Positions 6,201 through 50,700 of a stretch of DNA of 64,000 bases are shown here, in pieces. The notes under the pieces are model-generated. The model saw nothing but the letters and a program-made list of their open reading frames with translations. It was not told the origin of the DNA and searched no databases. Source of the stretch: Pecten maximus. Its lineage: Eukaryota. A program made the position numbers and the translations under genes. The first letter of the stretch is position 1. Every line of letters starts with the position of its first letter. The DNA lies in assembly GCF_902652985.1 (NCBI RefSeq), contig NC_047024.1:41850001-41914000 (forward strand), in the 5' to 3' direction.

Positions 6201-8101
6201 CAACATTGCCTGATTTCATATAATTCTCATTGTACTTTATCACTTCAGTCGAGAAAACAGTAATTAAATGAAAACCAATTGATCCAACTTACTAGATCCA
6301 CACGTATCACCCCTGTATCCATCTTTGCATTTACAAAAAGGGAGGCTATTCGTGTCACAGGACGCGGTGTTCTGTGAGTTACATACACCGCAAAAGTCAA
6401 CAGGGCCACCCGTCACGGTTCCACAATTGACGATGCAAACTGTGCAAAAAAAGAAGCGGAATCTTTTTTTAAGCACAAGTTCGTCTTTTTCGGATTTGGA
6501 TTTAAAAGAGTTGATTTAGAACAATTACCCTATGTCGTTTAAACATATTTTCAAATTTGTAGCATTGATATATTCATGTGTGAATAATTTCTCCATCTCC
6601 ATTATCAGTGAATTTTGTAAATGTTGATGTTTATATTAACACGGAAACCAAATACGTAAATACAGTTTGTCTTATGTCTATAATCATCTATATGCGGGGT
6701 TCAGGTATCATTCAGAGCTTACCAAACACTGAACTTAAATGATTGAATAATCAAAATTCCCTCAATACAGATAGAATGATGAGTTTTTCTTAATTCATTC
6801 CGTTGAAAAAAAATATGTAAATCAAAAGCGAAGTAACAAATAATGATGTCACTTTTATGATACGGCAGTGCTTGATTATACACAATTATATATATCATTT
6901 AACCATACCTATACCGCCGTCTCCAATTATTGACTCTGGGGCTGTAAATCAAAATTAAACGTCACTTTAAATTGCTCCAAACACGGACGAATATCAAAGT
7001 AAAAGGAATCTCTTCACTTATTTATTAAAAATATACCCTACCTCATACCATGTTGAAAAGGCAAGAAACATTGTCATTTGTTAATGTACAACATACATGT
7101 TTATACATGATATAATGAAGAATCATAATTTGGAGAATAAATGGGGTTTCTAAAACTGCAGACAGGCTCTTCATACGACCTTGGCTATTTCAATGACGTT
7201 TAATCCCTTGGAATGAGAATAATAAACTTATCGGATTAAAAGTGTTTTCTGACTTAAACATTACATTTCTAAGAGGATCATTCACTCTCATAATATTCTA
7301 AAATCATTGTTTCAGGAAACAACTCGCAATGGTAGTAATCTGAATTTCTGTTTGTCAATACACAGTACGTTTTTTTATCAGATATGTAAACACATGGTTG
7401 CATTTTTGTTGAATAATTATTACGGGCAATGCCATATTTCAAACTACATTCCATACGTGCAATGACTTAAATAAACGACACAGTGACACATACATAGTAT
7501 CAAACATGTAGAATTCAGTTAATCAAATGTATACTGAAAATAAATAAATACAAGTGTAATCAATGTTTCAGGATGTGTGTGTGTCAAATAACTTTACCAC
7601 TTCCGGTGAGATTTGCAGCAGGAACAGCTCCTGAAAATGACAAAACCATATTTCACTTATTTTTGCTTGTGAAGTCTATTCAAACAATCTTTTTATTTCA
7701 TTAAGATTGCAAAATTCAAATAAATTTACATATTATTGTATCTGATAGAGGTTTTTATTTTACTAACCACATGATTTAGAAAAAAAAAGAAAAAAAAGAT
7801 ATTGTTCACTATATTCAATTATTACGCATTGCATCATGCGTTACAGGGTGTTTGATACGAGCATGTTTTTCTTCAATGCATGCTGCTTATTTATTCTTAT
7901 CGAGAAGGAACAATTGTGATGTAATATACTATGGGAGCTTACGTTTTCCAAGATGAGTTTTACGTTTCTTTGAGCATGTACTTCCGCTCCATCCATATTT
8001 ACATCGACAACTTCCGGTCACATGGTCACAATAACGGGAATTTCCACGTATGCAGTTACACTTATGTGTACACCCAGACCCGTATGTCCACTCAGGGCAA
8101 G
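218..8101 (-). CDS. Gene A: partial multi-EGF (MEGF10/Draper/Nimrod-like) receptor, close paralog or allele of gene C. Exons 1-2 are missing at the gap and the 3' end runs off the window.
   Basis: GT-AG phase-1 exons in transcript order: 7943-8101, 7598-7630, 6909-6941, 6293-6439, 5991-6125, 4864-4998, 3398-3532, 1954-2088, 1585-1719, 1165-1296, 218-352. EGF exons are 132-159 nt, each with 8 Cys (e.g. CSDWKYGSGCGSDCACVQANSASCNNVNGACTCSAGYIGTNCEN). No stops seen. Collinear with 24535-33345. Confidence 0.85.
3602..4059. mobile_element. 458-bp MITE-like insertion in a gene A intron
   Basis: Imperfect ~20-bp TIRs (gagaccaaccaaccacttga / tcaattggttggttgttccc) flanked by TATA on both sides; absent at the homologous site in gene C (~29180). 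Confidence 0.8.
5525..5930. repeat. Degenerate low-complexity (agtcaca/acacata) intronic repeat; homolog at ~30570-31320
   Basis: Many agtcac(a) motifs. Confidence 0.7.
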
Positions 8102-8160: not shown

Positions 8161-8660
8161 NNNNNNNNNNNNNNNNNNNNNNNNNNNNNNNNNNNNNNNN
8201 NNNNNNNNNNNNNNNNNNNNNNNNNNNNNNNNNNNNNNNNNNNNNNNNNNNNNNNNNNNNNNNNNNNNNNNNNNNNNNNNNNNNNNNNNNNNNNNNNNNN
8301 NNNNNNNNNNNNNNNNNNNNNNNNNNNNNNNNNNNNNNNNNNNNNNNNNNNNNNNNNNNNNNNNNNNNNNNNNNNNNNNNNNNNNNNNNNNNNNNNNNNN
8401 NNNNNNNNNNNNNNNNNNNNNNNNNNNNNNNNNNNNNNNNNNNNNNNNNNNNNNNNNNNNNNNNNNNNNNNNNNNNNNNNNNNNNNNNNNNNNNNNNNNN
8501 NNNNNNNNNNNNNNNNNNNNNNNNNNNNNNNNNNNNNNNNNNNNNNNNNNNNNNNNNNNNNNNNNNNNNNNNNNNNNNNNNNNNNNNNNNNNNNNNNNNN
8601 NNNNNNNNNNNNNNNNNNNNNNNNNNNNNNNNNNNNNNNNNNNNNNNNNNNNNNNNNNNN
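8161..8660. other. Assembly gap (exactly 500 N, probably a placeholder size)
   Basis: Run of N. Confidence 0.99.
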
Positions 8661-16900: not shown

Positions 16901-19341
16901 AACATAAAGAGGCGTTTTTATTAATAAAATATCCAATTACCCTGCATTATGCATCCTATTACTCGGATATATTAAAGTACATATGGGAATACATTACTCA
17001 CATGTTGTTCCTCTCCAACCAGATGTACAGCGACAATGCCCAGTCACGTGATCACAAAACAGAGAGTTTGAACGTATACAGTTACATTGTTGTTTGCACA
17101 TAGCGCCATAAGTCCAGTTAGAACATGCTGCGGACATAAAGAAATATATCTTCAATCTAAAATCGCATGATGTGAAACTGATTCTAAATCTATTCCTTAA
17201 TATGCAGTTCTTGTATATAAAGAAAGCATTTGATGTAAAACATAATCAGGAAAGAAAGAAATGCATTCTATATATTGATATTACCGTCTGAAGAATGGTC
17301 TCTTCCTTTGAATGTCTGACGTAAATCGACAAAAATAAAATTGTATTTCAATATTATATTATTGGACAGTATTTGAAGATCATCTTACAATACTTTTAAT
17401 CTAGAATGGTAGATCAAGTCGTTCCTTTGAAATAGACCTAATCTAGTTTTGCATTTTGACCATGCTTCTCCTCTTTTACGTATATATGTTCCTGTTTGAG
17501 AAACACGTTCGTATCCGATATTTGCGATGCCCATTGATCATTTGTACTTTATCTACAGACTTATTTCTTTGTGAGACATTGTTGTCCAGTAAAGCTGCAT
17601 TTTTGATAGCAAACATATTTAGAACACCGTTACATTACGTTCGGACGCATGTATTAAAAGGGAGGAGCATGCACTTATTTACATTATGCATAAATGGATG
17701 TCTGTGACGTTTTAAATTATTGTTTTTATGTACGCAGTTTATTTTTTTCTGAGGAGTTAACAAGACCATTAAACATTATTATTTTTTTGTATCACAATCA
17801 AACAATTGTTGAATCATTAAATTGCAATTCAGTTATAGTTTACAATATCAAAATCACTGTTTTCAAATATTCGAGGTCAAATTTTGAGAGTGATACGTTG
17901 TTTCTGTTTGTTTACGATACGTATAAATGACGTTTATTCAAGTTTACATTACCCAGTGGTTTATATGTATTTACCTTCACAAAGCATTTCCTTTCCTTGC
18001 TGTCGATATCCGGAAGGACAGTTGAATTCCATCGAACTTACAGGAAATATATCACTGCTAGAACGATCAAAAAGGTAAACAATTACTACACGGGTGAATA
18101 CTTTATCGTAATAATAAAATATGGCGGTCAAAACGGTCCAGAGTGTGAACTGGTTTCTATTCCAACATTCAGAGGACGAAGTGACCCCCATGTGTAACCT
18201 GTGGTGAAATGCCGATTATTAATATACAAAACTGACAATAGATTGGTGTCACGAAACTAGACAAAGGAATGAAATCATCATTATATTTGTACAAATAGAT
18301 ACAGTTTACACCACACGTGGTGGTAATTATTAATTCCTTTCGGTTGAATCATAGGGTATAAATCTGTTATTATAATTTTGTTATGACTTTATAACAAATT
18401 GTCATATTTCCACACATTTCTGAAACCATCAGTTTTGTATATTATTAACGTATTTCACTTTAGGTCATATATTTGCACTCCAACTATGAAAAGAACACGC
18501 GTTAGGATGTCAATGTATCATCAAAATATTTCCCTAATGTGGTAAAAAAACAGGTAAAACAATATCGTGGTTGTTGAATATATTGCTCTTACCCTCGGTA
18601 GTTTTGTTTAACCGTTGGTGATCGTGTTTTATTTATAACATTTAAAAAAAAACTACTTTGGTTATATTAATATCATATTCAATGACCCCGAAGAGGTGTT
18701 GGAATTATTATGTATAAGTCCTAATTGATTTTCAAAACATTCGAAATATTCAAGAATATGCCAGCCCATGGTTGTTAGGCGTTTTTCATGTATGCAGTTG
18801 TGCATTTCATAAAACAATCACTGACTATATACACGCATGTATATATATGTACGTGACGAGCTACTCTTTGCTTCAACCAAATAGTAGAGTGTTGAGAGGG
18901 GGAAACATTCACAAATTATGTTCGAAACAAATTTAATTTTCTATCTTTGATAATTTTAATCAGGATTATAAAAAAGCATAGCAAGTTATAATATTACAAA
19001 CATCAAACTAGTATATACATTGTTTATAGAAATTATTATTAAAAGCAAATATTCTTTAAAACCTACACTGGTCAGATAATTTTCAAAGTATGAAGGGATG
19101 AATTAAACAAAGGCATTATCTGATTAACCTTACACACATATATATACCATAAAGTCAGAAATGATCCAGGAAATAACGATATACTAAAACTTCTTATTAC
19201 AGCTCACAGAGACCTGGCACGGTGTATGCATTACCTCACATCCTGTTTATGTGCTGAAGAGAAATTGAAAGCCAGTACAAATAGTATCCAAATAACATTA
19301 ATTATGTTATCATTTAAAATACATATCCCTGGAACGACCAT
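10909..19341 (-). pseudogene. Gene B: multi-EGF receptor paralog, probable pseudogene with no TM or tail exons found
   Basis: Exons: 19235-19341 (signal peptide MVVPGICILNDNIINVIWILFVLAFNFSSA), 17975-18057 (CPSGY), ~16999-17128, 16791-16823, 15781-15813, 14919-15074, 13893-14027, 13564-13698, 12808-12939, 12193-12327, 11586-11720, 10909-11043. Lesions: in-frame TAG at 14965-14967, TAA just after the last Cys-Glu of exon 3, and three conserved Cys lost (C>F, C>Y, C>Y). Confidence 0.75.
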
Positions 19342-21629: not shown

Positions 21630-22078
21630 CTAATCCAAATCAGCGTAAGTTTCCGAGACGCCTCTTCCTCCCAAACTCTCGTATTCTTCTTGTATACCAG
21701 CGTTTCCATACACTGGCTGTGCTTTAGTCTGCTGTACTGGGGGAAGTGGTAGCGGTGTTTTTGCAATTTTCGGATTTATTCTTGGACTCGAAGTAGCGGA
21801 ATTGGAACTGTAATTTTGATAAGTGGTCGCTGAAACATCCCCTTTTGGTTTGAGATCTTTACCGGCGTTACCAGCCGCTGCAGCAGAAATACCGTCTGTG
21901 TAGTAATACTCGTCCCCACTTGTGGGAACAGGTGGTGCCACCTGTGAACCATTCCCCGCCGGTGTGGACGAGTTGTTCAAAGTATCTCGGCCATAATATA
22001 CCCCGTCTTTATCATTCGGTAAGCCCTTTGCTGTAGGTGTCTTTTGATATCCTGTAGCTTTCGCGGCAACCCCTCCAG
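21630..22078 (-). CDS. Gene C terminal exon: cytoplasmic tail with YxN sites, a Pro-rich segment and YESL-x8-YADL
   Basis: ORF 21630-22094; acceptor AG at 22079-22080; phase matches the previous exon. Confidence 0.88.
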
Positions 22079-25000
22079 CTAAACAATGAATCAAAACCGT
22101 AGATTCATGATTATGACATGTACTATTTCATAAATAATAAAATTGCAGAATTGTTTTTCAAAAGGGTTCAAACTCAATTTTAAAACATGTTTTCACTATA
22201 TTGTTATAAACATATATATATTTTTTGTAAAATAATTACAAATGCATTGTAACATATACAGACAGTGTTTGAACAAAACAGTATCAATAAAAAACAAAAA
22301 GAAAGAAAAAGATAAAAGTTTCAAGATAAGCAGATGAAGCATAGCTAAATCGCCATCTTACGTCGAATATGATTGTTTTAATTGACGTTTAAGAGATTAT
22401 GTTACTACCTATAGGAGGCGCAGGTGCTTCGGGTACCTCAGAAAGCTCAATGAAATCTTTCTTTCGTCGAGACCGAGATTTCACCTCATGGCAGGAACAT
22501 CTATAATAAATACAAACAAGACTTTGTTTGAACAAAGGTGAATACGATTTTGCAATAGCTTTAACAAATGATATACAAATTCAATTACATAAATAAATAA
22601 ATACTTAGTATGCCAGAATATGAGAATGAGAATCATTGTTAGGTTTCAAGCTCTAAGCTAACTCTTGTTGTTCGCAATGATTTCTTCCTATTACAAAACA
22701 AAACTGCAGAGCGTATGCTATAAAACTGGCCTACCTGCACGCGCACCACAGAACGACAGCTATGATTACCACTAGGACAAATGCAGCCAGGAATCCTAGA
22801 ATACCAACCAGGGCCGGACTGCTAACCAAGGCAAATGCAGCAGCTAGGGACAGAAAGGCAAGCAAAACTATTGTTTTATGAGTTTATGTGATTCTAGGAA
22901 TATTTGTACTTATGTTATGAAGGCCATGCATGCTTTGGCACATTTGTACTGTGTTGACAAGGCAATGGGAAATGACTTCAATCAAAATTTATATGCATGT
23001 ATTATATTTGTTGATATAGAAGAAATACGGGCATTCGATGCTTGCAATGTCAGAGTATGACTTAAAATATATAATAATTTCTAGGTTTAATTACAGAATA
23101 AACTGAAGAGCAAAACATCTCTACTTGAACTTCCACATGTTCTTTCCCGTATGACACATGGTACCTTACCTAAAGCTTATTCAAAATATCCTTCAAATAC
23201 AATGTAGCATCCCTGGTGCCGTTTTGAAAATATAGAGTCACCTATCACAAAACCTGTATCATACCTCGCCAGCTACTGTTACATACATAGTCACGTGTAA
23301 CATTATCTTTATGACATCTGGTAGGTGTCTCACCACACAATGTTGCCCACACATGCTTTTGTCACCTTACCTGTATCACACCTAGTGCCCTCCCAGCCAC
23401 TGTTGCATGCACAGGCACCCGAAACCTTGTCACATAGGTTTGTGTGTTGAGCATCACAATCACAAATCCCAATACATGCTATTCCAAATGTATTGTCCGC
23501 ACAAACTGTCAAAAATAAAAGCAAGCTAACATTTTACCACATAACCTTTATGGTGGTAATAAGCCTTTTTAGCATCTTATCAGCTTTTGCTGTTAGTAAT
23601 TAAAACTGATGAAAATATCGTTAATGTTGCGCCTGAATTACTTTTGTGCAGTAGGTTTTTAAAATGTATGCCAAAATGAAGATTATATGAGATTTTGTGC
23701 CTACAAGTAAAGAAAGCAACGCCGAAATGGACGGGAAAATGATATTTCGTACACAAATACGGACGGTAATTAGTGATACTTCGGGTCAAACTGAGAGTTT
23801 TTACGATTATGATACATAAAACACTTTAGTTTCGATTGGAAGTAAAACTGCCGTATTAATTTAAAGATTGAAAAATTTACATCTTGGGAATAATACACAT
23901 TTCCCATTCAGTTTCAGCATTATATACTTTATTCAAATGAAGGAATTACCTTATAAAGAAGCATTCTTGTCAATGTTTCGATCTTGTGTTCCCTTCGTTT
24001 TTTTAATCGGTTGTAAGTTGTTGTTTTTTGTTTTTGTTATCGATTATCCGTTTGTGTATATAACTCACCACTATCACAGGTGTCACCGACATATCCCGGA
24101 CTACACGTGCACGCCCCTGTCACGTGATTACACACTGGGTATGCATTGGAGGGACAGGAACATGATTGTGAGCACTTATCACCGAACTTCAAAAGGCTGC
24201 AGACTAAATCAATCAAATATTTAATTTAGAGGGTCTAAGGTATCATTAAATTTCATCTTTTAAAGGTTCAAAAGTTTTTAAGCTTAATGAAGTAAATGGA
24301 GATATCATAACAAAATATATTTAGATCACTTCGTTTCAAATAATCTACATATGATATGATAAATAGCATGTTTTTATTAATATGTTGAAATATTTGTTTT
24401 TCTGAATTAAAGCGTTTTTACATGTTTAATATTATTTAATGAAAAATTTAAAAGGTATCTTCACATCAAAGGACATTGAAAAAAAATACTTGAGTGTACT
24501 CGTGAAATGAGGGAATTGGAATAGCAAATATCACCTTGTGTGCAGTCTGGTTGATCATATCCGACTGCGCATGTGCAATATCCGGTCACATGGTCACATG
24601 CTATTGTATTATTTAAATGACAGTCACAAACAGATGAACATCCATCTCCGTAAAAACCGGAAGGACACGCTAGGTAAAATAAATCATTTAGATATATGCC
24701 CATATGATATCGAAGTAGAAAACAGTTTTATACTCAAAAGAGATTCTAGCAGAATTTTATTCTCGTAGTTATTAAAGAAATATTGCATTTAAATCGAGTA
24801 AAATGTTTATAAAAAATGAAGGCAATGATGTAAATATGTCGAAAATGAAAATTTCAGCATAGAAGAACATGCTCATGACATAACCCCATGGATCAAATGT
24901 AACCATATCCCACAATACATAGAGGATATCTAACAGTGTCTTCAGTAATACACAATATATTTCACGAGTGGAGCTAGTATTTTGATATTTTTCACGAGTG

Positions 25001-28000: not shown

Positions 28001-31000
28001 TTTCCATGCGCTGCAAGCTGACATCAACATAATATTAACTATTTTGTATTCGAAAAGCTTATCCAAACGATGACTATACACTGTTACATAGGTTGCTCTA
28101 TATTGTGTGACAACCCGCAGTCACAAATAAAGTAGACGATATCACAACAGTGTCTGTAGGGTCAAATCAGACCTATAAAAATTTCCAGGCCAGTGACCAA
28201 TCTGCTATGATGTCGGTTGCAAATGAAAAAATTGCCTTTATACTAGTTTAAATCCTACTCCATTTGTTTGGTTTAAAACGAACGATTTTTCGCAATTAAT
28301 TTTCCCACCCTGTTGTATTTTTATTATTAAAATGAAAAAAATGTCAAATGCTTAAGAAAAGAAAAAAAATTAAATAAAAAATGAATAAATATAATAAATC
28401 AAAAGTGAATAAATAACAAATAATGTATCATACTGAGTTTGTAGCAAAAGTTAGATGGCATCCTTGCAGTTTCCGAAAACCAGCTCAAAACGGCGGAATG
28501 ATAATATCAATTATAAGAATACAAATTCAAATTACGTAAGAGACGGAACAATAATATCCATGGGGACATCATTAAAGATGATAAACCCAAGATAATGCGC
28601 TGCATTAGTAAGACGATTAACATGGCACTGTACCTGTTATGTTAGCATGGTATACTTACATGATTCACAATTATTTCCGGAGTAACCAAGATGACATGTG
28701 CAGTCTCCATTAACGCTGTTGCAGGTCACGGTGTTGGCTTGTACACATGTGCAGTCACTGACGCAACCAGACCCATATTTCCAGGCACTGCACGCTAATA
28801 CAAACAAAAAACGGGTTACTCCATGTTACGTAAATCTTAACGTATATATAATGCCATCCCTTCTTCATCTACCTATGTGGATACATGTTCCAGGCACTGC
28901 ACGCTTATACAAACAAAAAACGGGTTACTCTATGTTACGTAAATCTTAACGTATACATAATACCTTCCCTTCTTCCATTACCTATGTGGTTACATGTTCC
29001 TGGCACTGTACGCTAATACAAACAAAAAACGGATTACTCTATGTTACGTAAATCTTAACGTATATATAATACCATCCCTTCTTCCTCTACCTATGAGGAT
29101 ACATGTTCCAGGCACTGCACGCTAATACAAACAACAAACGGATTACTCTATGTTACTTACCTCGATATTCACTTATAGATAATAATATCCCTTCTTCCTC
29201 TACTTATGTGGATACATGTTCTACTTGATTCGACTATCAAAGAAAAATCACTATGATTTCTACGATAGATGACGACTTCTCACCGAGAAGTTAACAATGC
29301 AGGATTTGGGGGATGCGGGTTGATCATGATCGTAGGAAAGGTTTATAGACGACAACGTGATCGCCTTTTGACATACTCTTTTGTCTTGTGTGTATGCAGA
29401 CATACGTTTTTATTGCTTGCTGATATGTCGAGGTTCTATTAAAAACGCCATAGTTCTCTTTTTGAGGACGTGACATCACCCTTATTTTGCATAAAACTTA
29501 TTTATGACGAGTGTCGACGATAAGCTGAAGCCACTTATTACTCTAAACACATGGTTTTATTCTCATTGACTTTTCTTGCCACAGGTCTTAATGCAACTCG
29601 GTTTTTTAAATATGGTTTTGACCTCTTTTTATCGATTTTTGAATCTGTTACTTTCACTTATTAGCATTCTCTGTTGTCTTTAATCAGAAACATGTTCAGC
29701 ATAAGCGTTGGAACAATTAAGAATTCAATAGAGACAAATTAAATATTTAAAATGATAAATATATTTTTTTAATTATGTGGCAGGTAAAAGAATCCCCTCA
29801 TACCCTCATAATCTATGTTTGACAGACTTAACCAGTGAAAAGCGCTCTGGAAATGTACTCATATAAATTCTGTATTATACATACGTACACATCAGAATTG
29901 ACAAAAGGGTCGCTTAAATCAAAAATATGAAAACAAATAGCATTAACATTATGAATCTCTTGTAAACCTACCGGTGTCACAAATAATTCCGGAGTATCCA
30001 GGGTCACACAAACATTGCCCGTTTTCATTAATACAGCTAGCGGTGTTAGCCTGTACGCATGTACAGTCACTGCTACAACCATCACCATACTTCCAGGCGC
30101 TACATGCTAAAATGAATATTGAAACATTTATTGTTAAGTGAAACATGAACTAATAAAATGTTTTTGGTTAATTATGAAAATAAGTTACTTTGCCATTCAT
30201 TATGTGTACAAACATATGTATATATTTCTGTATTAAGGACTGGGCAATACACATCCTCTTATATTTCTTCGCGTATCGTCACTCGTGTATTAAGGCGAAA
30301 TTTTACCTGAACATTTCGGCATACCGTTCCTTGACACCGTCAAAACAAGTGCTTTGTTGAGGGTTTGCATGTGACAAAACTGGATGTAAGACTCAATAGA
30401 TAGATGTAATATCTCCTAGTGAGGTAGAGTTTAGAAAAAAAAACCCGATCCCTTAGCTGTTTCATGGTAAAATTATAACGACACTCGATATGTCAACACC
30501 TTTTTAATAATTGTTGTTTGTTACATAGGTTGAGTCTAATTATAGTGAAATCTGTTGTTTTACTAGCGGTCACGCATAGTCATAATTAAACACATACAGA
30601 CACTTGTAGTGACACATACAATTTAGTCACAATATAACCCAGTAAGACACAAACAGACACTTATAGTCACAGAAAGTAACAATGATATACAATTAGACAA
30701 GATCAGACATTTATAGTCACACATAGTCACAATATATAGAGGATTTCTAACATTGTCTTTAGTAATACCAAATATATTTCACGAGGGGGCTAATATTTTG
30801 ATATTTTTCACGAGTGCGCAGCTAAAATATTAGGCACACGAGTGAAATAAATTTGGTATTACTGAAGACACTGTTAGATATTCTGTTTATTACATTTGTT
30901 ATCAACGAAAAACCTACCCCGTATACTAACTAGGTCTACAGCGAAAGTTTACATAAATAGTACGTTTATAGTAGTTCCCCTTATCCAGGTGCTGACATAT

Positions 31001-34000
31001 ATGTCGGGCTTTCTGATTGGTCAATTATTTTGGTATTTTCTAATCATTAATTTCATTGGTCAAATCAGCAAAAATTTCACTTTTAAAAAATAAATATTTT
31101 TGATATTTCATTGGTAAAAATGTAATAAAACACGCGTATACATATATAGGTAATTACACCCTTTACATAGCCACAATAAACCACAGTTTGGCAAAGAAAG
31201 ACACATTTAGCCACAGATAGGCACATATATACATAGTTAGATACAGAAAAACATATTTACGCAAATATATCAAATACCGGCACAGTAAGGAACTGGAAAT
31301 GCACAACTAGTTACATTTAGGCCGTGATCAAATTAGATACCGATAAATAGTTAGATAATTCTTTTATAATTACCATTTTCACAGTTTGTCCCAATGTAAC
31401 CTGCACTACATGTACAGGCCCCGTTTACATTGTTACAAGATGCTGAGTTAGCTTGTACACATGTACAATCACTTCCGCAGCCGGATCCGTACTTCCAGTC
31501 GCTGCAACCTGAAACAAATATTGTAGCGGTTGGATGAAACATTCAACGCGCTCGTATCTGATGGCACAAATGCTAGTTGACTGCAACATTGCCTGATTTC
31601 CGACATATTTGGTTGTATTTTATCACTTCGGTCGACAAAATTAATTGAAAGAAAACAATTAATCCAACTTACTAGATCCACACGTTTCGTCCTGGTATCC
31701 ATCTTTGCATTTACAAAAGGGGAGACTACTCAAGTCACAGAACGCGGTGTTCCTTGAGTTACATACGTCACAAATGTCAATAGGGCCTCCCGTCACTATT
31801 CCACAATCGATGATGCAAACAAAGCAAAAAAGAAACAGAATAATCAAATTTCGCAAGCACAATTTAGTTTTTTTTTCAAATATGGATTTAAAAAATTTGA
31901 TTTAGAACAAATTCACTATGTTTAAATATATTTTTGCAACTTAATGTTCAAATTTGTAGCATTGATACACTCATGTGTGAATTTTTTCTCCATATGTCAG
32001 TGAGTTTTCGGTAAATGTTGATGTTTTAACAACAGGAACATCAAATACGTAAATACAGTTTGTCCTATGTCTATATTTATCCATATTTCATATTACATGC
32101 GGGATTTAGGCAACATCCAGAGCTTACCAAACACCGAACTTAAATGATTGAATAATCAAAATTTCTTAAATACAGATCGAATGATGACATTTTTTCTTAA
32201 CTCATTCAGTTGAAAAAATATGCATATCAAAAGTAACGTAATAAATAAAGACTTGATTATACACAATTTTATATCTCATATGATCATACCTATACCGCCG
32301 CCTCCAATTATTGACTCCGGGGCTGTAAATCAAAATTAAACGTCACTATAACTTGCTCCAAACACGGCCAAATACCAAATTAAAAGGAATCTAATAATAT
32401 ATATTAAAGTAATAAGCAAACGGTTTCACTTATTTATTAAAAATATACCCTACCCCATACCATGTTGAAAAGGCAAGAAACAATGTCATTTGTTAATGTA
32501 CAATGTTTATAAATATATAATGAGGAAACATGATAAGAACAATAAATGTGGTTTCTAAAACAGCAGGCAGTCTCTTCATATTACCCTGGCTATTTCAATG
32601 ACACATGAAATGAGAGAAATAAACTTCTTGACTTTTCTTACTAAAACATAACATTTCGAAGAGAATCAAATACTCTCTAAATATTCTAAAATCATTGTTT
32701 CATGATTCAACTCGCAATGATATTTATCTAACTTTCTGTGTGTCAATACACAAAAATGTTTTATCAAAGATGTCAACACCTTTTTGGTTCCATTTTTGTT
32801 GAATAATTAGTATGGGTAATGCCATATTTAAAACTACTACATTCCATATGTGCAATGGCTTGGAATAAACAACACAGAGAAACGTACATGGTATCAATAA
32901 AAATAATGTAGAATTCAGTTAATCAATTGTATACTAAAAATAATTAAATACAAGTGTAATCAATTATTCAGAGTGTATGTGTGTCAAATAACTTTACCAC
33001 TTCCGGTGAGATGTGCAGCAGGTACAGCTCCTGAAAATGTCATAACCATATCTCAATTAATTTTTGCTAGTAATTGTATTGTATATGATAGACGCTATTA
33101 AAATAATCATTAGTTTGTAAAAATAAAAATAATTTATTCTTATCTAGAAGGAAACAATAGCGATGTAATATAGTATAGGAGCTTACGTTTTCCAAGATGA
33201 GTTTTACGTTTCTTTGAGCATGTACTTCCGCTCCATCGATATTTACATCGACAACTTCCGGTCGCATGGTCACAATAACGGGAATTTCCACGTATGCAGT
33301 TACATTTATGTGTACACCCAGACCCGTATGTCCACTCAGGGCAAGCTAGATAACAAAACCGATAAGCGAGCAGTTCACATGCACATGTATGATCATAACT
33401 GGACTTGCCAAAAGTATATTTTACATTGATATCAGTATGTAGATGTAGATGTCAGACTTAACAGTTAAACGAGCAATATACTAACACTTTGTCATTTTTT
33501 TTCAAAATATTTCCTTACATTATTGTTAAAAAAATTAACTAAAAATCAAAGATATTATTTTATGAGTGTGGTTGGGTTTCAAACTAACAAAGCAGAAGTA
33601 ATTTAGGGTGATATTCTTCTGTACCATAAGGCAGTAGATTGTGTATAATATTTTAAAGAAAACAGGTTATTAACACATTTTCCCCCTTTTCCTGTTCGAT
33701 ATACACAGACTTTTATCCAATGTCAGAGATAGTGATCGGGAAAAATGGTTGCCATCATGAACGTATAGGAACATATCATATTTTCGTCCATGCAATCTAG
33801 ATTCTTACGAGTTCGAGTTTCCATTGAAATCTTTATTTTTGCTTCATAGTTTGCCCTCGTTTTTATCGCCTGTGACTTTTAATGCTGGTTTTGTTATTAT
33901 GTTATTATTCTTTGTTATTACTCTTTTGATCTAGAAATAATTATTGGTCGTCAAATTGAGGATACCACCAACATACTTACCTCTGCATTGCGTTTCCTCT

Positions 34001-34823
34001 TCGCCCCGCCAATATCCGATCGGACACTGGAGTTCCTCCGCATCAACAGTTTTTATTTCATTGCTAGAATATACCAATATAAAAAAAATAATAATGATAC
34101 TCTGGTCTCGAGAAATTAAGCCAGAACTGCTTTTTCTATAGTTTATAGCGAGATTTATTGACGACTAAGTCACATAGAGGATTATATTCGTCTAACGCGG
34201 TTTTAAATAGTGTCCTGGTTAGAGACAAAATCTATATCAAAATAGCCAAAACCAAATCAGATGAAAATACCATTGATATCATTCAGCCAATTATGTTTAA
34301 TTAAAGAAACAGGCTACTCTTCTTTCGTCATACATAGATATATAAAATACGGACAAAAATATCTTATTTACACCGAAACAATAGTTTTAACAATGCATTT
34401 ATCTACAGGTATATGAATCAAATACTATTTGATTATCACGAAATCAACCCAATTCAGAAAAAAAAACTTACTTTAGAATGATTACGATAACACGACGAGC
34501 GACAAACCTATTGTTTCGTACTTTAATCCTCAAAATCCGAAAACCTCATTGAACTGTCCTGATTGACATTGTTTTGAACAGGTAGCTATCACTTAGACCA
34601 CTTGAAGTGTTAGTTATATTTAGATACCATCGTTGATGTTTATACTCTTTCAAATAAGCGAAAACAATGTTTAAATAATATTAATAATAAAATGTAATTG
34701 ATTACATTACCTTTTCTGTTCTGTATTTGTTGTGAAGCAATTAAATCCCGGTTCTAACAGGAGGAAAATTGCTAGAAAAGCGATCATGATTACAAATGTT
34801 GATCTTCTAACATAATGTTTCAT
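21630..34823 (-). CDS. Gene C: complete multi-EGF type-I membrane receptor (MEGF10/CED-1/Draper-like), 20 exons, ~899 aa, 13 Cys modules, ITAM-like C-terminus
   Basis: Exons: 34711-34823 (signal peptide MKHYVRRSTFVIMIAFLAIFLLLEPG), 33981-34063, 33187-33345, 32998-33030, 32290-32322, 31673-31819 (acceptor mutated), 31374-31508, 29972-30106, 28660-28794, 27883-28017, 27216-27350, 26476-26610, 26142-26276, 25668-25799, 24535-24669, 24069-24203, 23371-23505, 22735-22843 (TM ALVGILGFLAAFVLVVIIAVVLW), 22409-22500, 21630-22078. Phases are all compatible and the total is 2700 nt. Confidence 0.88.
24918..25110. mobile_element. Unclassified interspersed repeat with internal palindrome (copy 1, truncated)
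   Basis: tagaggatatctaacagtgtcttcagtaata...tttttcacgagtgcgcagcacgagtgaaaaata; shared with 30735-31130; absent from gene A. Confidence 0.7.
28781..29220. repeat. 109-bp tandem repeat, 4 copies, containing the acceptor of gene C exon 28660-28794
   Basis: cc(a/t)ggcactg at 28781, 28890, 28999 and 29108. Confidence 0.93.
30735..31130. mobile_element. Unclassified interspersed repeat with long 5' palindrome (copy 2)
   Basis: ctaacattgtctttagtaataccaaat...atttggtattactgaagacactgttag; interrupts the agtcac-rich intron; absent from gene A. Confidence 0.72.
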
Positions 34824-39826: not shown

Positions 39827-42800
39827 ATGATACTTAGTAGTTTTTTACCCATATTATTTGGAGTTGTATGGCTGATGACGTCGATGAGTACAGGAAGTTT
39901 ACAACCACAGAGGAATGATAGGTATGTCTTTGGTTGATATGTTTTTCATAGTTTAGTTTCATTTTATTAATCTCGTTCATTTCAAAGATGATATACATAA
40001 TTTGAAAAAAATAAATTCTCAGATATAATATAATATTTCAGAAACACGTTTTATATGTGCGTTACAGAAATTTATGGCATTTTTGAAAATAACATCAATG
40101 CGGAAATTGTTATGATGTTGAACTCGTTAATCTAAGCTCACATATATATATATATGTATATTTATATATCATATATATTCAACTGATGAATTCAAATGTT
40201 GAAAGGCATTTTCTATATTCACTTCGTGTTTGTATTTTTGTTATCAGTTTAAACAATACAGACATAGACTATGCAATAGCTCGTGTAAATGGTGACGAGT
40301 TTGAGTGCAGTACGGGATATAGGCGAGTTGGAAAGGAAAGACGCTGTGAAGGTAATTAACTTCTATTTAGACACTGAAATCAATGAAAAAGATATATGCA
40401 CATTATAAGGGCACACGACACTTACACTTTGCATTGTCAGTGACAATGACAAGTACACTTATATGAAGTTTCCAGCTAGAGGGACCGCGGAACCAAATGA
40501 TTTCCCATAGACGGTAGTGTTAAAGTTTACCACTGTCCTACTTAAATGGAGTTTTCATCTCTGGTCCACTAACTATAATTTTGAATAATGACATCTCACA
40601 CACATGTAAATTAAATATTTGAAAATTCAAAAACTGCATTTCTTTCAAAGATGTACCATATCATTAACTCTATTAACTATGTTATTTTCAAAAAATATGA
40701 GGATTCGTGGATCGTCAATACCCAATACGATTATTTATATTGGCTATAAAAGTGTTATAATAAGGTATACAACAAATCTGAATTTAAATATATTTTCTTG
40801 ATAAAATCTAGGAAGCTACGGCGGCAGTGTATATTAAACATTGATTCTAACGATAGACAGAAATGTATAATGGAACAGGAACGAAAAAGAAGTTTTTGCT
40901 TAATCCGAATTATTCTGCAAAGATTGATCTTTTGATAGAAAACCATTTTTTTCATTAATAAGGCCATAGTTTGATTACCAGGTTAGACCTGAAAATGTCT
41001 TTTTTTTCTTGTCAAACACGTAATTTATCTTTATGATTACACCGTTGTTCCGTTCATCCTTAAAATACATATCTCGCAATAAATTATTGATTTTCAATAT
41101 TTTCTATTTTAAAGCTTGTTCGGGCTGGACATACGGAGACTCTTGTCGTCGAAAATGTAGCTGTGTTCGTAACAATACACGGACATGTGGACACTTGACC
41201 GGAGTCTGTGTTTGTCATCCACGCTGGACTGGGATAACATGCAGTCTCCCTGTGGCAATAAAGCGGGGGAAAAGTAGGAAAAAAATATTATTAATTGATG
41301 AACTGCTGAATCAGTTTCTGTTATTTTTCAATACAAAATCTAAAAATACGATTGAATTGTTACTCATGAAAAGAAAACGAGTTAAAATCATGCTCCATCA
41401 AGTTTGTTTCCAAAACTGAATAAGCTCTATTCCAGTTTATCAGAATTAAATATCAAATAAATGGAATACGAATTTTGACATGTTCCGCCACATGATACTT
41501 TCACAACGCTGTAAAGGCATTGGAAGTACAACGATGGCATACCTGAATAACTGAAAGATTGTTGGTGTCACCGCTACACGCTCTTAAAATAAATGTGATT
41601 TCTTTGAGGACCTTTCCAAAAATGAATTACTTTATTTTCATGTTTCAAACAAGCATTTATGTTGCATTAAATAGTTAAGATCTCATAACAAAAACAATTA
41701 TCGTTCTCTATATCTTGATTTCGATGGTTAAAAAAGCTGAGCAGTATTATTTCAACGGGGTAAATAAAGCAAACTAGTTATATTGACGTCATACCAATGT
41801 AGACAATTTTAAGTTATCATGGCATTCCTTATTACATTGATGAAAATAACTTTTAAGTTTTACTTTAGTCACAAAGTTTACTCAGTACTTTCTGCCAAAT
41901 CGCAGGTATTGAGAACTTTAAACTAGTGTCGGTAGTTTACATTCCAATGTATATACCATTGAAATGGTGAAAATGGCAATTTTGCTTGACATCGTTGGGG
42001 GGCATAAATTATAATATGCAATTGTTGTTTTTTTTTGTAGGATCAGGGGACTCTGGGGTCAAGGCTCTTGTACCAGAAAATCTTTCAGGTAAGCTTTGAT
42101 CTGTTTTATTCATAACGTTTTTTTAACCAAATTTCCTAGCTTCATTAATTGATGGTAATGATGTCATGTCATGTCGATTCCATGTTGTAACGCATTCTTA
42201 TCCATTAGAGATGCAAAACTGAATTTGAACAAAGAATAAGGAAGCATAATCCGGATACAATGTACACACATACTTCCAATTTGTATAGTTAGCCCATGAT
42301 GACTGTTTAAGGCATCAATGAACGCAATTGATGCAAGACATCAAGGAAATAATTTTTTCAACAACAGCGCCGCCAGATGATCAAGGTCGCGAGAGTCATA
42401 TATAAGGCATATTAAACATATTTTATCGAAAGCATACAGAAGCAACCAAACATTAGCATGGGCTTCGAGTTTACTCATACAGATATTGGGATCATTATGT
42501 TATGTTGTCATTTAAAATACCATGCCCTTTATAATTTCGCCTATAACATATGAAGACATACCGCGAAGAATTGCAGAACACAGTATTCATCCTCTTATTA
42601 TATGCAACAAATAGAGTTTTATGACTCAGATTTCTATGTTGTGTAAATATGATTATTAATAAAACGTCTTTCAGTGTGTCCTGCTTGGTTTTACGGAGTA
42701 AACTGTACGGAGATGTGTTCCTGTAACCAGACTACGTCTGTAAGCTGCAACTCTGCGAATGGGTCATGTATATGTACACCAGGACACACCGGGAATCAGT

Positions 42801-47790: not shown

Positions 47791-50700
47791 ATGGCTTACC
47801 TGAAATATGTTGTCCTGGTGAGTCTAAGTCTTGGTGTATTAGGGGATGAAAAGGCGCTTTGTACAAAGAAAATAAGGTATGTAAACAAAGAAATGAAATA
47901 AACAATAACATAAATAAAAACAAAAATGCAGCCTTGACAGAAATAGTTGCATTTGTAAAACAAAATTCAGAGTAACTGAGATTATGTAGAAATGTTGTTT
48001 AAGAAAAAAATTAAATAAAAAGGAAATTGCTGTTCATAAGAAATTTTAAGACCTATGCTAAAATGCTTTTGTTAGACTATTTTTTCGTGTTTTTGATTTA
48101 ATGTGTATGATTTCATATACTCAAAACATAAAGAATAAGAATTGCATGACATATTGAAACATATTAGCATACGGGAGTATGTATGTAGGTAGTAAGTGTC
48201 AATTAAATCAAGATTCTTAACAAAAAAGATAATTATTTCTGTTTACAAAAACAGGTTCATTCTTTGTCACACATTGAAGATTTTAATTCGTACAGAACTT
48301 CACAGGGGTCAGAAGTGAGTTACAGGGAAGAGTTGGGATGCTGTGCCGGGTACACAGAGGTGACAGGCGATCAGCTTTGTAGAAGTAAGTTACTCTCTTC
48401 TACAGATGGAGTAGTTATCACCATAAATTAAAGTGACCTGTTCAAGATTTCTCTGCCACCCAAAGGATGACATATCTCTGTCAACCTGTAGATAAAGATG
48501 CATCGCACGTTCTTCCAATAATACGAAATTTCAAGGACGTCACGTTGTAATTCAATAACATCAGGTCAAATTGTGTAACATTGTAATATTTTTTTCCTTT
48601 TATTTTGAATATTGGAACGATTGTATCCTGCGTAACAAAAACGTGATGAGAGTAAAATAATAACCCCTAACTTGAAATATCGCTCCCTCAGGACGATATT
48701 CCTGGTTGTTTAGCTCTCGGCAGAGCCTCGGGTACGGTAGACAACCTATAATTTCATCCACTGCGTTGGAGATTTCTCCATCACACCTTCAACGTAGGAG
48801 AAATTTAACATAAATTTGCTACGAGTAGAATTGCATAGCAACATTCAGATTTTAGAAAACGTCTGATTATAAAAATGGTCAATGGTCCATCAGTACCATA
48901 AATAAATAATCAATGATTCATTTTTATTTCATACCTGTCAAGTACAAGCTCTCTGTCTACTTAGAATAAAAACAAGATGGTCCCGCTTCGCGGCTTTGTC
49001 GTAGGCGGAACTAAAATAGATTAAACCAATAAACGATAGTTATAACGTGTAGATACCAGAAACAAAGACATGTTACACATAGCTTATAAATTGACATTAA
49101 AGGTCTTAGACGTAATAAGACCCATAAATTACATAGCTAACAAAAAACAAATTCTCGCAATTCATCTTAATTCTACACTATAAATTACTTTTTACCCAAA
49201 CTGCATTATTGCATTTAATAGAGCTCTCCAACCTAATATTGTTATCACTACTCTCTAGTCATATTGTCAACGAATCAAAATATGAATGTTTTATTATAGA
49301 GTGTCCGATTTGGACGTTTGGTCTCTCCTGCAGACACAAATGCCGCTGTGATCGTAAAAACACCAAATATTGTGACCACATCACTGGAAGCTGTGAATGC
49401 CGGCGAGAATGGACAGGACAGACATGCGCTATACAATCCCATATATTTAAAGTGAAAAGTACGTGCGAAGTATTGATACACATCATTAAGAAAATGAATG
49501 TGTAATGATAGATGTGTCTTGTATATATGTCAATGGAATCGATATATCTTGTAAATGCTTCCTTTCTTCAATGCATCATTTTGCTTTATTCTAACTAAAT
49601 TGTGAAGTAAATACCAAGGAAAGTATAATGTGAGTATATACTTACAATATATATATATCAGCTTAAGATAATTTACAGCATATGCTTTTTTTAATCAAGA
49701 ATGATTAACAAGACATTCAATAAAGAGAGATAACTCCAAAGTAAAATATATTAGAAAATAAATTAAGATATATTCCCTGATGGTTTGTATCATATACGAT
49801 TTCGCTTATCGTTAGACAAATCTTTTTTTTTATTTTACAGGGCAAACCAACACCACATGTAAGTAAAGAAAGTGTACAATGACATTGGGACACATTATAT
49901 ATTCTATAATATCTTACAAGATCGTTTTCTTTGATGATTTTCTAAATGTATGTTTGTTTTCTCTTTTGTTTGTTTGTTTGTTTGTTGTTTTTTTTTTTAT
50001 GAATAACGGAAACTTATTTTCAGTCATAGTAAGTATTCAGAACAAAGATTTTGTTTTTGCTGCATATCGTTTCAATTAATGATATCCCCCCTAATTTCAA
50101 TCGCTAATAAATTCTGTATATAAAAAAGCGTGCATTGAAGCTCAATTTGTATGCGTTGCATAAAATGTCACAAGCGTTCCCTAACTCAAGGAAACTCGCC
50201 AATTTATATTCTGGTTGCGATTAAGTGTCTTATTTCTGCTCGAAGCTACACTTACTTATTCCCGTTTAATGTCCTTACACGATACAAACTCATTGCATAC
50301 ATACTGCATCTACTATGATGAAGGGACACCTCTACTATATAGGCACGGTGTAAAAAAAACTTATTATTTTAAACAAATAACCAAACGTTGCTACGACTTT
50401 AAATCGATATGATAAGTTCTGAATCACTATCCGTATTAATGGGAATGTATTTATAAATGTTGATCTCTGACCTAACGCTAAAAAGAATGTCAAAATAAAG
50501 ATCATTTTGAATTGATTCTGTTTCCATTCCAATCGTGACTTTTTTGCAGACCCGTATTTATCTAATTAAATATATATTTTCTGAATTTATAGATATAGAT
50601 TAATCAACTTGTCTCGAGAAACTAGTATCTGTTATATTTAGTCTAATTCAATGAAATATACAGTGCCTTCATTGTCGTAATTATAATCTATGGTAATTTA

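What the first reader, a model, noticed from the sequence alone, without database searches (positions are those of the whole stretch)
32998..33215. Conserved Lys-Arg processing site assembled across the exon 3/4 junction: the N-terminal head may be cleaved off
Seen: in A, C, D and E exon 3 is 159 nt and continues exactly 10 codons past the last Cys, ending in Lys. The split codon then always gives Arg: C and A SKKRKTHLGK|R-AVP, D SLPVAIKRGK|R-SGD (41273/42041), E AIQSHIFKVK|R-QTN (49458/49841). Flanking residues are unrelated, and only KR is kept. Known: RxKR (D) is the furin consensus, GKR (A, C, D) is the convertase plus amidation signal, and a new N-terminal Gln (E) can form pyroglutamate. 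Inference: the ~85-100-aa head (CxxGY module plus first EGF) is released as a soluble peptide or acts as a pro-domain or tethered ligand. I do not recall this for Draper/MEGF10-type receptors. It is invisible in the ORF track.
Basis: partly seen in the sequence, partly recalled or inferred. Interest (0 to 1): 0.85.

Follow-up and report, generated by a model that had tools for sequence, protein, structure and literature searches.

The report
Conserved Lys-Arg junction in scallop receptors
In a cluster of king-scallop cell-surface receptor genes, a Lys-Arg pair is always spelled across one splice junction just after the first EGF domain; it looks like a cutting site for a furin-type protease, but no cutting has been shown.

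Summary
The sequence observation holds and extends. The window is Pecten maximus scaffold C10:41.85-41.91 Mb. It carries a tandem cluster of type-I receptors: signal peptide, truncated EMI motif, laminin-type EGF repeats, TM segment and an ITAM-like tail.

- Exon 3 is exactly 159 nt in genes A, C, D and E, in F just outside the window, and in a Ylistrum balloti homologue.
- It runs 10 codons past the last Cys and ends AAA plus one split base (C or A).
- The best-scoring downstream micro-exon (18-48 nt, phase 1-1) always starts G[A/G], so the junction reads Lys|Arg (CGA, AGA or AGG).
- Lys is the only invariant tail residue.
- One RNA-derived contig breaks exactly at the predicted donor and reads through the rival donor. 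The acceptor was not seen.

The cleavage interpretation is plausible but unproven. D (RGKR) and F (RVKR) match the furin consensus and E (KVKR) nearly does. A, C, Z and Ylistrum have KR only. The genome encodes kexin-type convertases. None of 33 more distant EMI-bearing multi-EGF proteins has RxKR at this position, so the trait is scallop-specific. The GKR amidation and pyroglutamate ideas apply only to subsets. No annotated protein or proteomic evidence was reachable.

Overall this is a moderately interesting, testable hypothesis.

The parts
34711..34823 (-). Gene C exon 1 (113 nt): start codon and hydrophobic signal peptide, phase-2 donor AAAG|gtaatg
33981..34063 (-). Gene C exon 2 (83 nt): degenerate EMI C-terminal motif (QCPIGY...C)
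33187..33345 (-). Gene C exon 3 (159 nt): 8-Cys laminin-type EGF plus 10-residue basic tail ending in Lys, then split base C; donor gtaagc
   Evidence: the RNA contig break at 33186/33187 is
32998..33030 (-). Gene C exon 4 (33-nt micro-exon, phase 1-1): begins GA, completing CGA = Arg, then AVPAAHLTGS
   Evidence: homologous exons in A, Z and Ylistrum are
7943..8101 (-). Gene A exon 3 (159 nt), 96% identical to C, with the same tail and donor
7598..7630 (-). Gene A exon 4 (33 nt): Arg then AVPAANLTGS, which contains an NLT sequon
41115..41273 (+). Gene D exon 3 (159 nt): tail SLPVAIKRGK plus split base A; donor gtagga
42041..42088 (+). Gene D exon 4 (48 nt): begins GA, giving AGA = Arg, then SGDSGVKALVPENLS; the site reads RGKR|S
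47791..47876 (+). Gene E exon 1 (86 nt): signal peptide and first Cys of the truncated EMI
48296..48378 (+). Gene E exon 2 (83 nt): YREELGCCAGY..., the EMI C-terminal motif
49300..49458 (+). Gene E exon 3 (159 nt): tail AIQSHIFKVK plus split base A; donor gtacgt
49841..49858 (+). Gene E exon 4 (18 nt): begins GG, giving AGG = Arg, then QTNTT; the site reads KVKR|Q
17002..17127 (-). Gene B exon 3: the same EGF, but the 10-codon tail is removed by a 33-nt deletion relative to copy Z; the remaining donor T|gtgagt would give T|GA with a Z-type exon 4
21633..22082 (-). Gene C last coding exon: cytoplasmic tail with ITAM-like YESL-x8-YADL

Best explanation
These genes form a scallop-specific tandem family of type-I membrane receptors. 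Each has a signal peptide, a truncated EMI motif, one laminin-type EGF, a short basic tail, a low-complexity linker built from one or two phase 1-1 micro-exons, further EGF repeats, a TM helix and a cytoplasmic tail with an ITAM-like motif.

The tail ends in Lys. The phase-1 split codon across the exon 3/4 junction is always Arg. This places a dibasic K-R at the boundary between the folded head and the flexible linker.

The most likely role is a processing site for a kexin/furin-type proprotein convertase in the late secretory pathway. Cutting would split the receptor into an N-terminal head of about 90 aa (mini-EMI plus EGF1) and a membrane-anchored stalk.

What is shown: the gene structure, the KR junction, its conservation in paralogues and in a second genus, use of the donor in RNA, and the presence of convertase genes. 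What is inferred: that cleavage happens, which enzyme does it, and the fate of the head (released, retained non-covalently, or a pro-domain).
For: - Exon 3 is 159 nt with a 10-codon tail in A, C, D, E, F and Ylistrum.
- Lys is the only invariant tail residue.
- Arg is kept through synonymous codon changes: CGA, AGA and AGG. The exon's last base is never the splice-preferred G, which would give Gly. By contrast, most generic EGF exons of the same genes end in G.
- P4 is basic in D (RGKR), F (RVKR) and E (KVKR).
- Between P. maximus A/C and Ylistrum the tail differs by four synonymous and only two replacement changes. That pattern points to purifying selection.
- Micro-exon 4 is conserved across the two genera, including its splice sites.
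- An RNA contig breaks at the predicted donor.
- A signal peptide lies upstream, so the site is lumenal.
- At least five P-domain (PF01483) convertase loci exist in the genome.
- The tail has pLDDT below 50 in the only model made. This is weak evidence because the whole model was poor.
Against: - There is no proteomic or biochemical evidence of any kind.
- The acceptor side of the junction was not seen in RNA.
- No annotated protein containing the junction could be retrieved.
- A, C, Z and Ylistrum have KR without a basic P4 or P6 residue, so they fail the usual furin rule.
- Positions -3 and -2 of the donor and +1 of the acceptor are partly constrained by splicing. There are only about 4 independent lineages, so the conservation is statistically modest. 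My rough estimate is p between 0.005 and 0.05.
- N-glycosylation sequons lie close to the P' side: NLT in A and Ylistrum, NTT in E. These could hinder cleavage.
- None of 33 EMI-bearing multi-EGF relatives has RxKR at this position.
- Gene B lost the tail, although B looks defective.
Confidence: 0.4

Rival explanations
1. The tail is an uncleaved basic hinge. The 10-residue tail plus KR would be a positively charged linker motif, for example for binding glycosaminoglycans, anionic lipids or a ligand, or simply a spacer. It would stay intact in the mature receptor. Under this reading KR persists through common descent, splice-site constraint and selection for charge, not for proteolysis.
For: - The whole tail is basic, not only KR. 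A and C have 6 basic residues of 11 plus a His. Ylistrum has SKRRITHLGK.
- In the A/C/Ylistrum lineage the entire tail is conserved (8/10), which suggests a binding motif.
- The A, C, Z and Ylistrum sites fail the furin P4/P6 rule.
- AAA at donor positions -4 to -2 and G at acceptor position +1 fit splice consensus.
Against: - Between lineages every tail residue except the final Lys varies, and so do the number and position of the other basic residues. A pure charge function would not fix exactly P2 and P1.
- The non-consensus last exon base (C or A, never G) is what preserves Arg.
- D and F have evolved perfect RxKR motifs.
Confidence: 0.38
2. The KR junction is an artefact of gene prediction. 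The micro-exons would not be used, or would be used only in minor isoforms. Exon 3 would then splice directly to a later exon, or from an internal donor as in the Ylistrum database model, so most mature mRNAs encode no KR.
For: - The exon 4 candidates are only 18-48 nt and were predicted from sequence.
- The acceptor was not observed in RNA.
- The only database model of a homologue (P0026) skips the tail and the micro-exons.
- No annotated P. maximus protein with the junction was found.
Against: - The RNA contig uses the predicted donor. The first base after the break agrees with exon 4 beginning with G.
- Exon 4 was the top or only candidate in A, D, E and F.
- The 33-nt exon, with both splice sites and the NLTG codons, is conserved between P. 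maximus and Ylistrum despite synonymous changes.
- The P0026 splice removes the last two Cys of the EGF, so that model looks wrong.
Confidence: 0.1
3. The gene acts as a prohormone. The head would be released by neuroendocrine convertases and then C-terminally trimmed and amidated via GKR in A, C, D and Ylistrum. In E and F the stalk would gain an N-terminal pyroglutamate. The gene would then double as a peptide-hormone precursor.
For: - G-K-R precedes the junction in A, C, D and Ylistrum.
- Gln is at P1' in E and F.
Against: - Gly at P3 is absent in E, F and Z.
- Gln at P1' is absent in A, C, D, Z and Ylistrum. Neither feature is family-wide.
- A disulfide-rich head of about 90 aa on a large ITAM-bearing receptor is unlike known amidated peptide precursors.
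- There are no expression data.
Confidence: 0.05

Closest known systems
MEGF10 / Draper / CED-1 / PEAR1 family (EMI plus atypical EGF repeats, engulfment receptors)
   Same: - Type-I topology.
- An N-terminal CCxGY motif of the EMI type.
- Tandem 8-Cys laminin-type EGF repeats encoded by phase 1-1 exons.
- A tyrosine-motif cytoplasmic tail with an ITAM-like YxxL-x8-YxxL, as in Draper.
- The Ylistrum homologue is named MEGF10 by NCBI.
   Different: - The EMI is reduced to about 35-40 aa, and Pfam EMI was not detected.
- There is no PEAR1-type EGF after the EMI.
- No NPxY motif was seen in the tail examined.
- A basic tail, a KR and a micro-exon linker follow EGF1. This is absent from 33 EMI-bearing relatives.
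- I found no report of convertase cleavage for this family.
Convertase-processed type-I receptors (sortilin/SorLA propeptide, Notch S1, LRP1, insulin receptor). This comparison is from general knowledge and was not tested here.
   Same: - A lumenal basic motif ending in Arg, placed between structured modules.
- Proposed cleavage in the late secretory pathway that yields an N-terminal fragment and a membrane-bound chain.
- D and F carry the RxKR consensus.
   Different: - The domain content is unrelated.
- Here the site is created only by splicing across a phase-1 junction.
- Half of the copies lack the P4 Arg.
- Processing has not been demonstrated.
Membrane-anchored EGF-ligand precursors (pro-EGF, HB-EGF, Spitz). 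This comparison is from general knowledge.
   Same: An EGF-fold module that could be released from a transmembrane precursor by proteolysis.
   Different: - Those ligands have 6-Cys EGF domains and are released mainly by ADAM or rhomboid proteases next to the membrane.
- Here the EGF is of the 8-Cys laminin type and lies at the distal N-terminus of a long multi-EGF receptor.

Membership tests
MEGF10/Draper/CED-1-type engulfment receptors | N-terminal EMI domain | tested here: inconclusive
   Only the C-terminal CCxGY...C motif and a first Cys are present. E exon 2 aligns to residues 81-98 of a canonical member (P0012) at E = 4e-4 for a single comparison. Pfam gave no EMI hit on the 27-aa exon. 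In C the CC is QC.
MEGF10/Draper/CED-1-type engulfment receptors | Multiple tandem atypical (laminin-type, 8-Cys) EGF repeats | tested here: met
   Each gene has several to about 12 EGF exons. PF00053 passes its threshold on the Ylistrum homologue and falls just below it on single exons. There were 588 multi-EGF hits in the representative search.
MEGF10/Draper/CED-1-type engulfment receptors | Single TM helix and cytoplasmic NPxY and/or YxxL (ITAM) signalling motifs | tested here: met
   A TM stretch is present in P0026 and P0151 and in the matching window exons. YESL-x8-YADL is present in gene C. NPxY was not seen.
MEGF10/Draper/CED-1-type engulfment receptors | Engulfment or phagocytic function | not testable with these tools
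   No functional or expression data were reachable.
Furin/proprotein-convertase substrates | Basic motif R-X-[K/R]-R, or at least K/R-R at P2-P1 | tested here: met
   KR is at P2-P1 in all copies with an intact tail. RGKR is in D, RVKR in F and KVKR in E. LGKR is in A, C and Ylistrum, and FIKR is in Z. The full furin consensus is therefore met in only 2-3 of about 5 lineages.
Furin/proprotein-convertase substrates | Site exposed in the secretory-pathway lumen, in an accessible region | tested here: inconclusive
   A signal peptide lies upstream and the TM downstream, so the site is lumenal. The following linker is rich in Pro, Ala, Thr and Gly. The AlphaFold model of the exon-3 peptide was poor overall (mean pLDDT 49.6, tail below 50), so disorder is suggested but not shown.
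Furin/proprotein-convertase substrates | Convertase present in the organism | tested here: met
   Seven exon matches at about 5-6 loci to the P-domain PF01483, all over the cut-off.
Furin/proprotein-convertase substrates | Demonstrated cleavage | not testable with these tools
   This needs protein biochemistry or proteomics.

The most novel reading that the evidence does not exclude
The KR junction is a genuine convertase switch on an ITAM-bearing, Draper-like receptor. The mini-EMI plus EGF head would be a removable pro-domain or tethered (auto-inhibitory) ligand. In some paralogues it would be a secreted, C-terminally amidated EGF-fold peptide. One gene would then yield both a soluble factor and a primed phagocytic or signalling receptor. 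Paralogues would differ in cleavage efficiency (RxKR versus KR only) and in micro-exon use.
Probability: 0.12. Interest if true: 0.75.

Novelty: new variant of a known kind. Interest (0 to 1): 0.4.

Why it matters
Bivalves have large, poorly understood expansions of genes named MEGF10-like, and these are often reported as immune-responsive. If the head of one subfamily is removed by a convertase, the ligand-binding end of a Draper-like, ITAM-signalling receptor would be controlled by proteolysis. I found no report of such control for this receptor family, and it would change how these genes are interpreted.

There are also practical lessons for annotation:
- The motif exists only after splicing.
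- It depends on 18-48-nt micro-exons.
- Current database models miss these exons. The Ylistrum model skips them.

If the site is not cleaved, this is an ordinary lineage-specific linker.

Tried and rejected
- **Annotated or transcript-derived proteins containing the junction.** I ran three searches: exon-3 ORF with a region (nothing), P0026 whole (only P0026 and a partial P. maximus paralogue, P0151), and the P0026 head region (nothing). The blanks say little because of the length filter.
- **Representative-library search with the exon 3 peptide.** Results were dominated by long multi-EGF proteins. Only P0026 was a family member.
- **The look-up of encoding contigs for P0151.** Records of the window's own genome are withheld.
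- **RNA evidence.** Only small contig-type runs were available. The donor is supported, the acceptor is not shown, and the 12 loose letters were not printed.
- **An early idea of mine, rejected.** I thought the terminal Lys was a family-wide exon-end feature ('GK' after every EGF). One search showed that 'GK' is just the translated donor G|GTAAG. Generic EGF exons end 2 codons after the last Cys.
- **Intron-retention reading.** I considered that the head is a separate small gene ending in intron 3. I rejected this because the read-through ORFs are unconserved.
- **AlphaFold of the exon-3 peptide.** Confidence was too low to use.
- **Pfam on exon 2.** No EMI hit on 27 aa.
- ProP-like scoring of a full spliced protein and complex prediction were therefore not done. 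The N run at 8161-8660, just upstream of A's exon 3, was left unfilled, so A's exons 1-2 were not examined.

Full report
**What the window is.** The window is AT-rich eukaryotic DNA. Its assembly has 918,306,378 bp in 3,983 scaffolds, and the window lies on a 44,824,366-bp scaffold at C10:41,850,001-41,914,000. These figures match the published Pecten maximus assembly exactly (PMC7191990). A paralogous protein found in the database is labelled Pecten maximus. Six-frame inspection shows tandem genes made of 8-Cys EGF exons. Genes A, B and C are on the minus strand. D and E are on the plus strand. F starts inside the window (exons 1-2), but its exon 3 lies just outside. A degraded copy, Z, lies upstream of the window.

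**The observation.** In gene C, exon 1 (34823-34711) encodes a start codon and a hydrophobic signal peptide. Exon 2 (34063-33981, 83 nt) encodes a Cys-x-x-Gly-Tyr motif. Exon 3 (33345-33187) is 159 nt. It encodes one 8-Cys EGF and then exactly ten more residues ending in Lys, followed by a single split base and gtaagc.

A 33-nt exon at 33030-32998 has a cag acceptor and a gtaaag donor. It begins GA, so the split codon is CGA, Arg. The finding's coordinates therefore run from the last base of exon 4 into the tail of exon 3.

Exon 3 is 159 nt in each. I also found it in three more places:
- In F, with a 21-nt exon 4.
- In the degraded copy Z.
- In the Ylistrum balloti homologue. Its genomic locus (L043) has a 159-nt exon 3 with the tail SKRRITHLGK plus C|gtacgt, and a 33-nt exon 4 clearly homologous to that of A and C.

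**Is it more than chance?** In the alignment of six exon-3 peptides, the invariant columns are the eight Cys, a few EGF framework residues and the terminal Lys. No other tail position is invariant.

Generic EGF exons of the same genes end two codons after the last Cys, usually with G as the split base. My early idea that Lys is a general exon-end feature was wrong, because the 'GK' seen in ORF tracks is the translated donor. In exon 3 the last base is C or A in every copy, never the splice-preferred G, which would give Gly. The C/A difference is synonymous in context.

Donor positions -3 and -2 and acceptor position +1 are partly constrained by splicing, and there are only about four independent lineages (Z/B, A/C/Ylistrum, D, E/F). 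I therefore rate the conservation as real but modest, roughly p 0.005-0.05 by a back-of-envelope estimate.

Between P. maximus A/C and Ylistrum the tail shows four synonymous and two replacement differences. The NLTG codons of exon 4 are kept through three synonymous changes. This points to purifying selection on both the tail and the micro-exon.

**RNA.** Only small contig-type runs were available. Run X2 contains a contig joining 31374 to 30106, which is an exon-exon joint of gene C, so it holds cDNA.

Another 151-nt contig matches 33324-33186 and then has 12 letters that do not match. It carries two A-type variants but not the third. An unspliced A or C molecule would have matched at least nine more bases, so the contig leaves the genome exactly at the predicted donor. 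It reads straight through the alternative donor near 33207.

**What the proteins are.**
- Exon 2 of E and F carries YRE..GCCAGY....C. This aligns to the C-terminal end of the EMI region of a canonical MEGF10/PEAR1-like protein. Exon 1 supplies a first Cys. The 'CxxGY module' is therefore a truncated EMI.
- The EGF units are of the laminin type.
- The homologue P0026 and the paralogue P0151 show a TM helix. The last exon of gene C ends with YESL-x8-YADL, an ITAM-like motif as in Draper.

**Cleavage hypothesis.**
- The site is lumenal and sits at the start of a linker rich in Pro, Ala, Thr and Gly.
- D reads RGKR and F reads RVKR, both matching the furin consensus (from general knowledge). E reads KVKR.
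- A, C and Ylistrum read LGKR, and Z reads FIKR. These have KR only, with a separate basic cluster further upstream.
- The genome encodes several kexin-type convertases, shown by the P-domain PF01483.
- The AlphaFold model of the exon-3 peptide was poor. Its low-confidence tail is at best consistent with flexibility.
- Among 33 EMI-bearing multi-EGF proteins from other taxa, none has RxKR and one has KR within 140 residues of the CCxG motif. This feature therefore belongs to the scallop subfamily, not to the MEGF10 family at large.
- Literature searches found no report of convertase processing of MEGF10, Draper or CED-1.
- The GKR-amidation and pyroglutamate ideas each fit only a subset of the paralogues.

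My probabilities:
- About 0.4 that the KR is a real convertase site. This is higher for D, E and F and lower for A and C.
- About 0.38 that it is an uncleaved basic hinge.
- About 0.1 that the junction is not the dominant splice form.

Noticed in passing
window 17002-17127 (minus), compared with copy Z at window -9827..-9723 (outside the window, C10:41840173-41840277): Gene B lacks the 10-codon tail. Relative to Z, a 33-nt deletion joins the last Cys codon directly to gtgagtaatg. With a Z-type exon 4 the split codon would be T|GA, a stop. B may be a pseudogene or may be spliced differently. Z's exon 3 is itself disrupted in its 5' half by an in-frame stop.
   Followed up: partly
L043:2800-4400 (Ylistrum balloti, gene of P0026): The database model (NCBI 'MEGF10, partial') uses a GTAAGT that lies inside exon 3. 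It skips the last two Cys of the EGF, the basic tail and two 33-nt micro-exons. This is probably an annotation error. The genomic sequence keeps the full 159-nt exon and the KR junction.
   Followed up: yes
window 21633-21700 (minus): The C-terminus of gene C carries YESL-x8-YADL, an ITAM-like motif. Several other Tyr motifs (YYGRD, EYYYTDG, YQNY, VYGN) lie in the same exon.
   Followed up: partly
window 30676-31266: Contig depth was extremely high in all four runs laid (thousands-fold, against single digits elsewhere), with many heterogeneous joints. This is a high-copy interspersed repeat inside an intron of gene C.
   Followed up: no
Joined to exon 4, it would give SKK|R, which is again a KR. 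The RNA contig reads through it.
   Followed up: partly
P0151 (Pecten maximus LOC117336103, 287 aa): The N-terminal ~70 residues of this database protein look like out-of-frame translation of EGF exons. It matches gene C's 3' exons at only 80-92%, so it is a paralogue, probably the 3' part of gene A outside the window. Annotation of this cluster appears fragmentary.
   Followed up: partly
window 7598-7630 (minus), 49841-49858 (plus), 42041-42088 (plus): N-glycosylation sequons lie just downstream of the KR: NLT in A (conserved in Ylistrum, lost in C), NTT in E and NLS in D. Glycans close to a convertase site could modulate cutting.
   Followed up: no
window 8161-8660: A 500-N run lies directly upstream of gene A's exon 3. 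It may hide or separate A's exons 1-2.
   Followed up: no
window -10345 (Z), 15813 (B), L043:3880: There is a second conserved 33-nt phase 1-1 micro-exon, encoding roughly xPVPIIDxGGI, in the B/Z/Ylistrum lineage. No counterpart was found in A, C, D, E or F. Linker length therefore differs between paralogues.
   Followed up: partly
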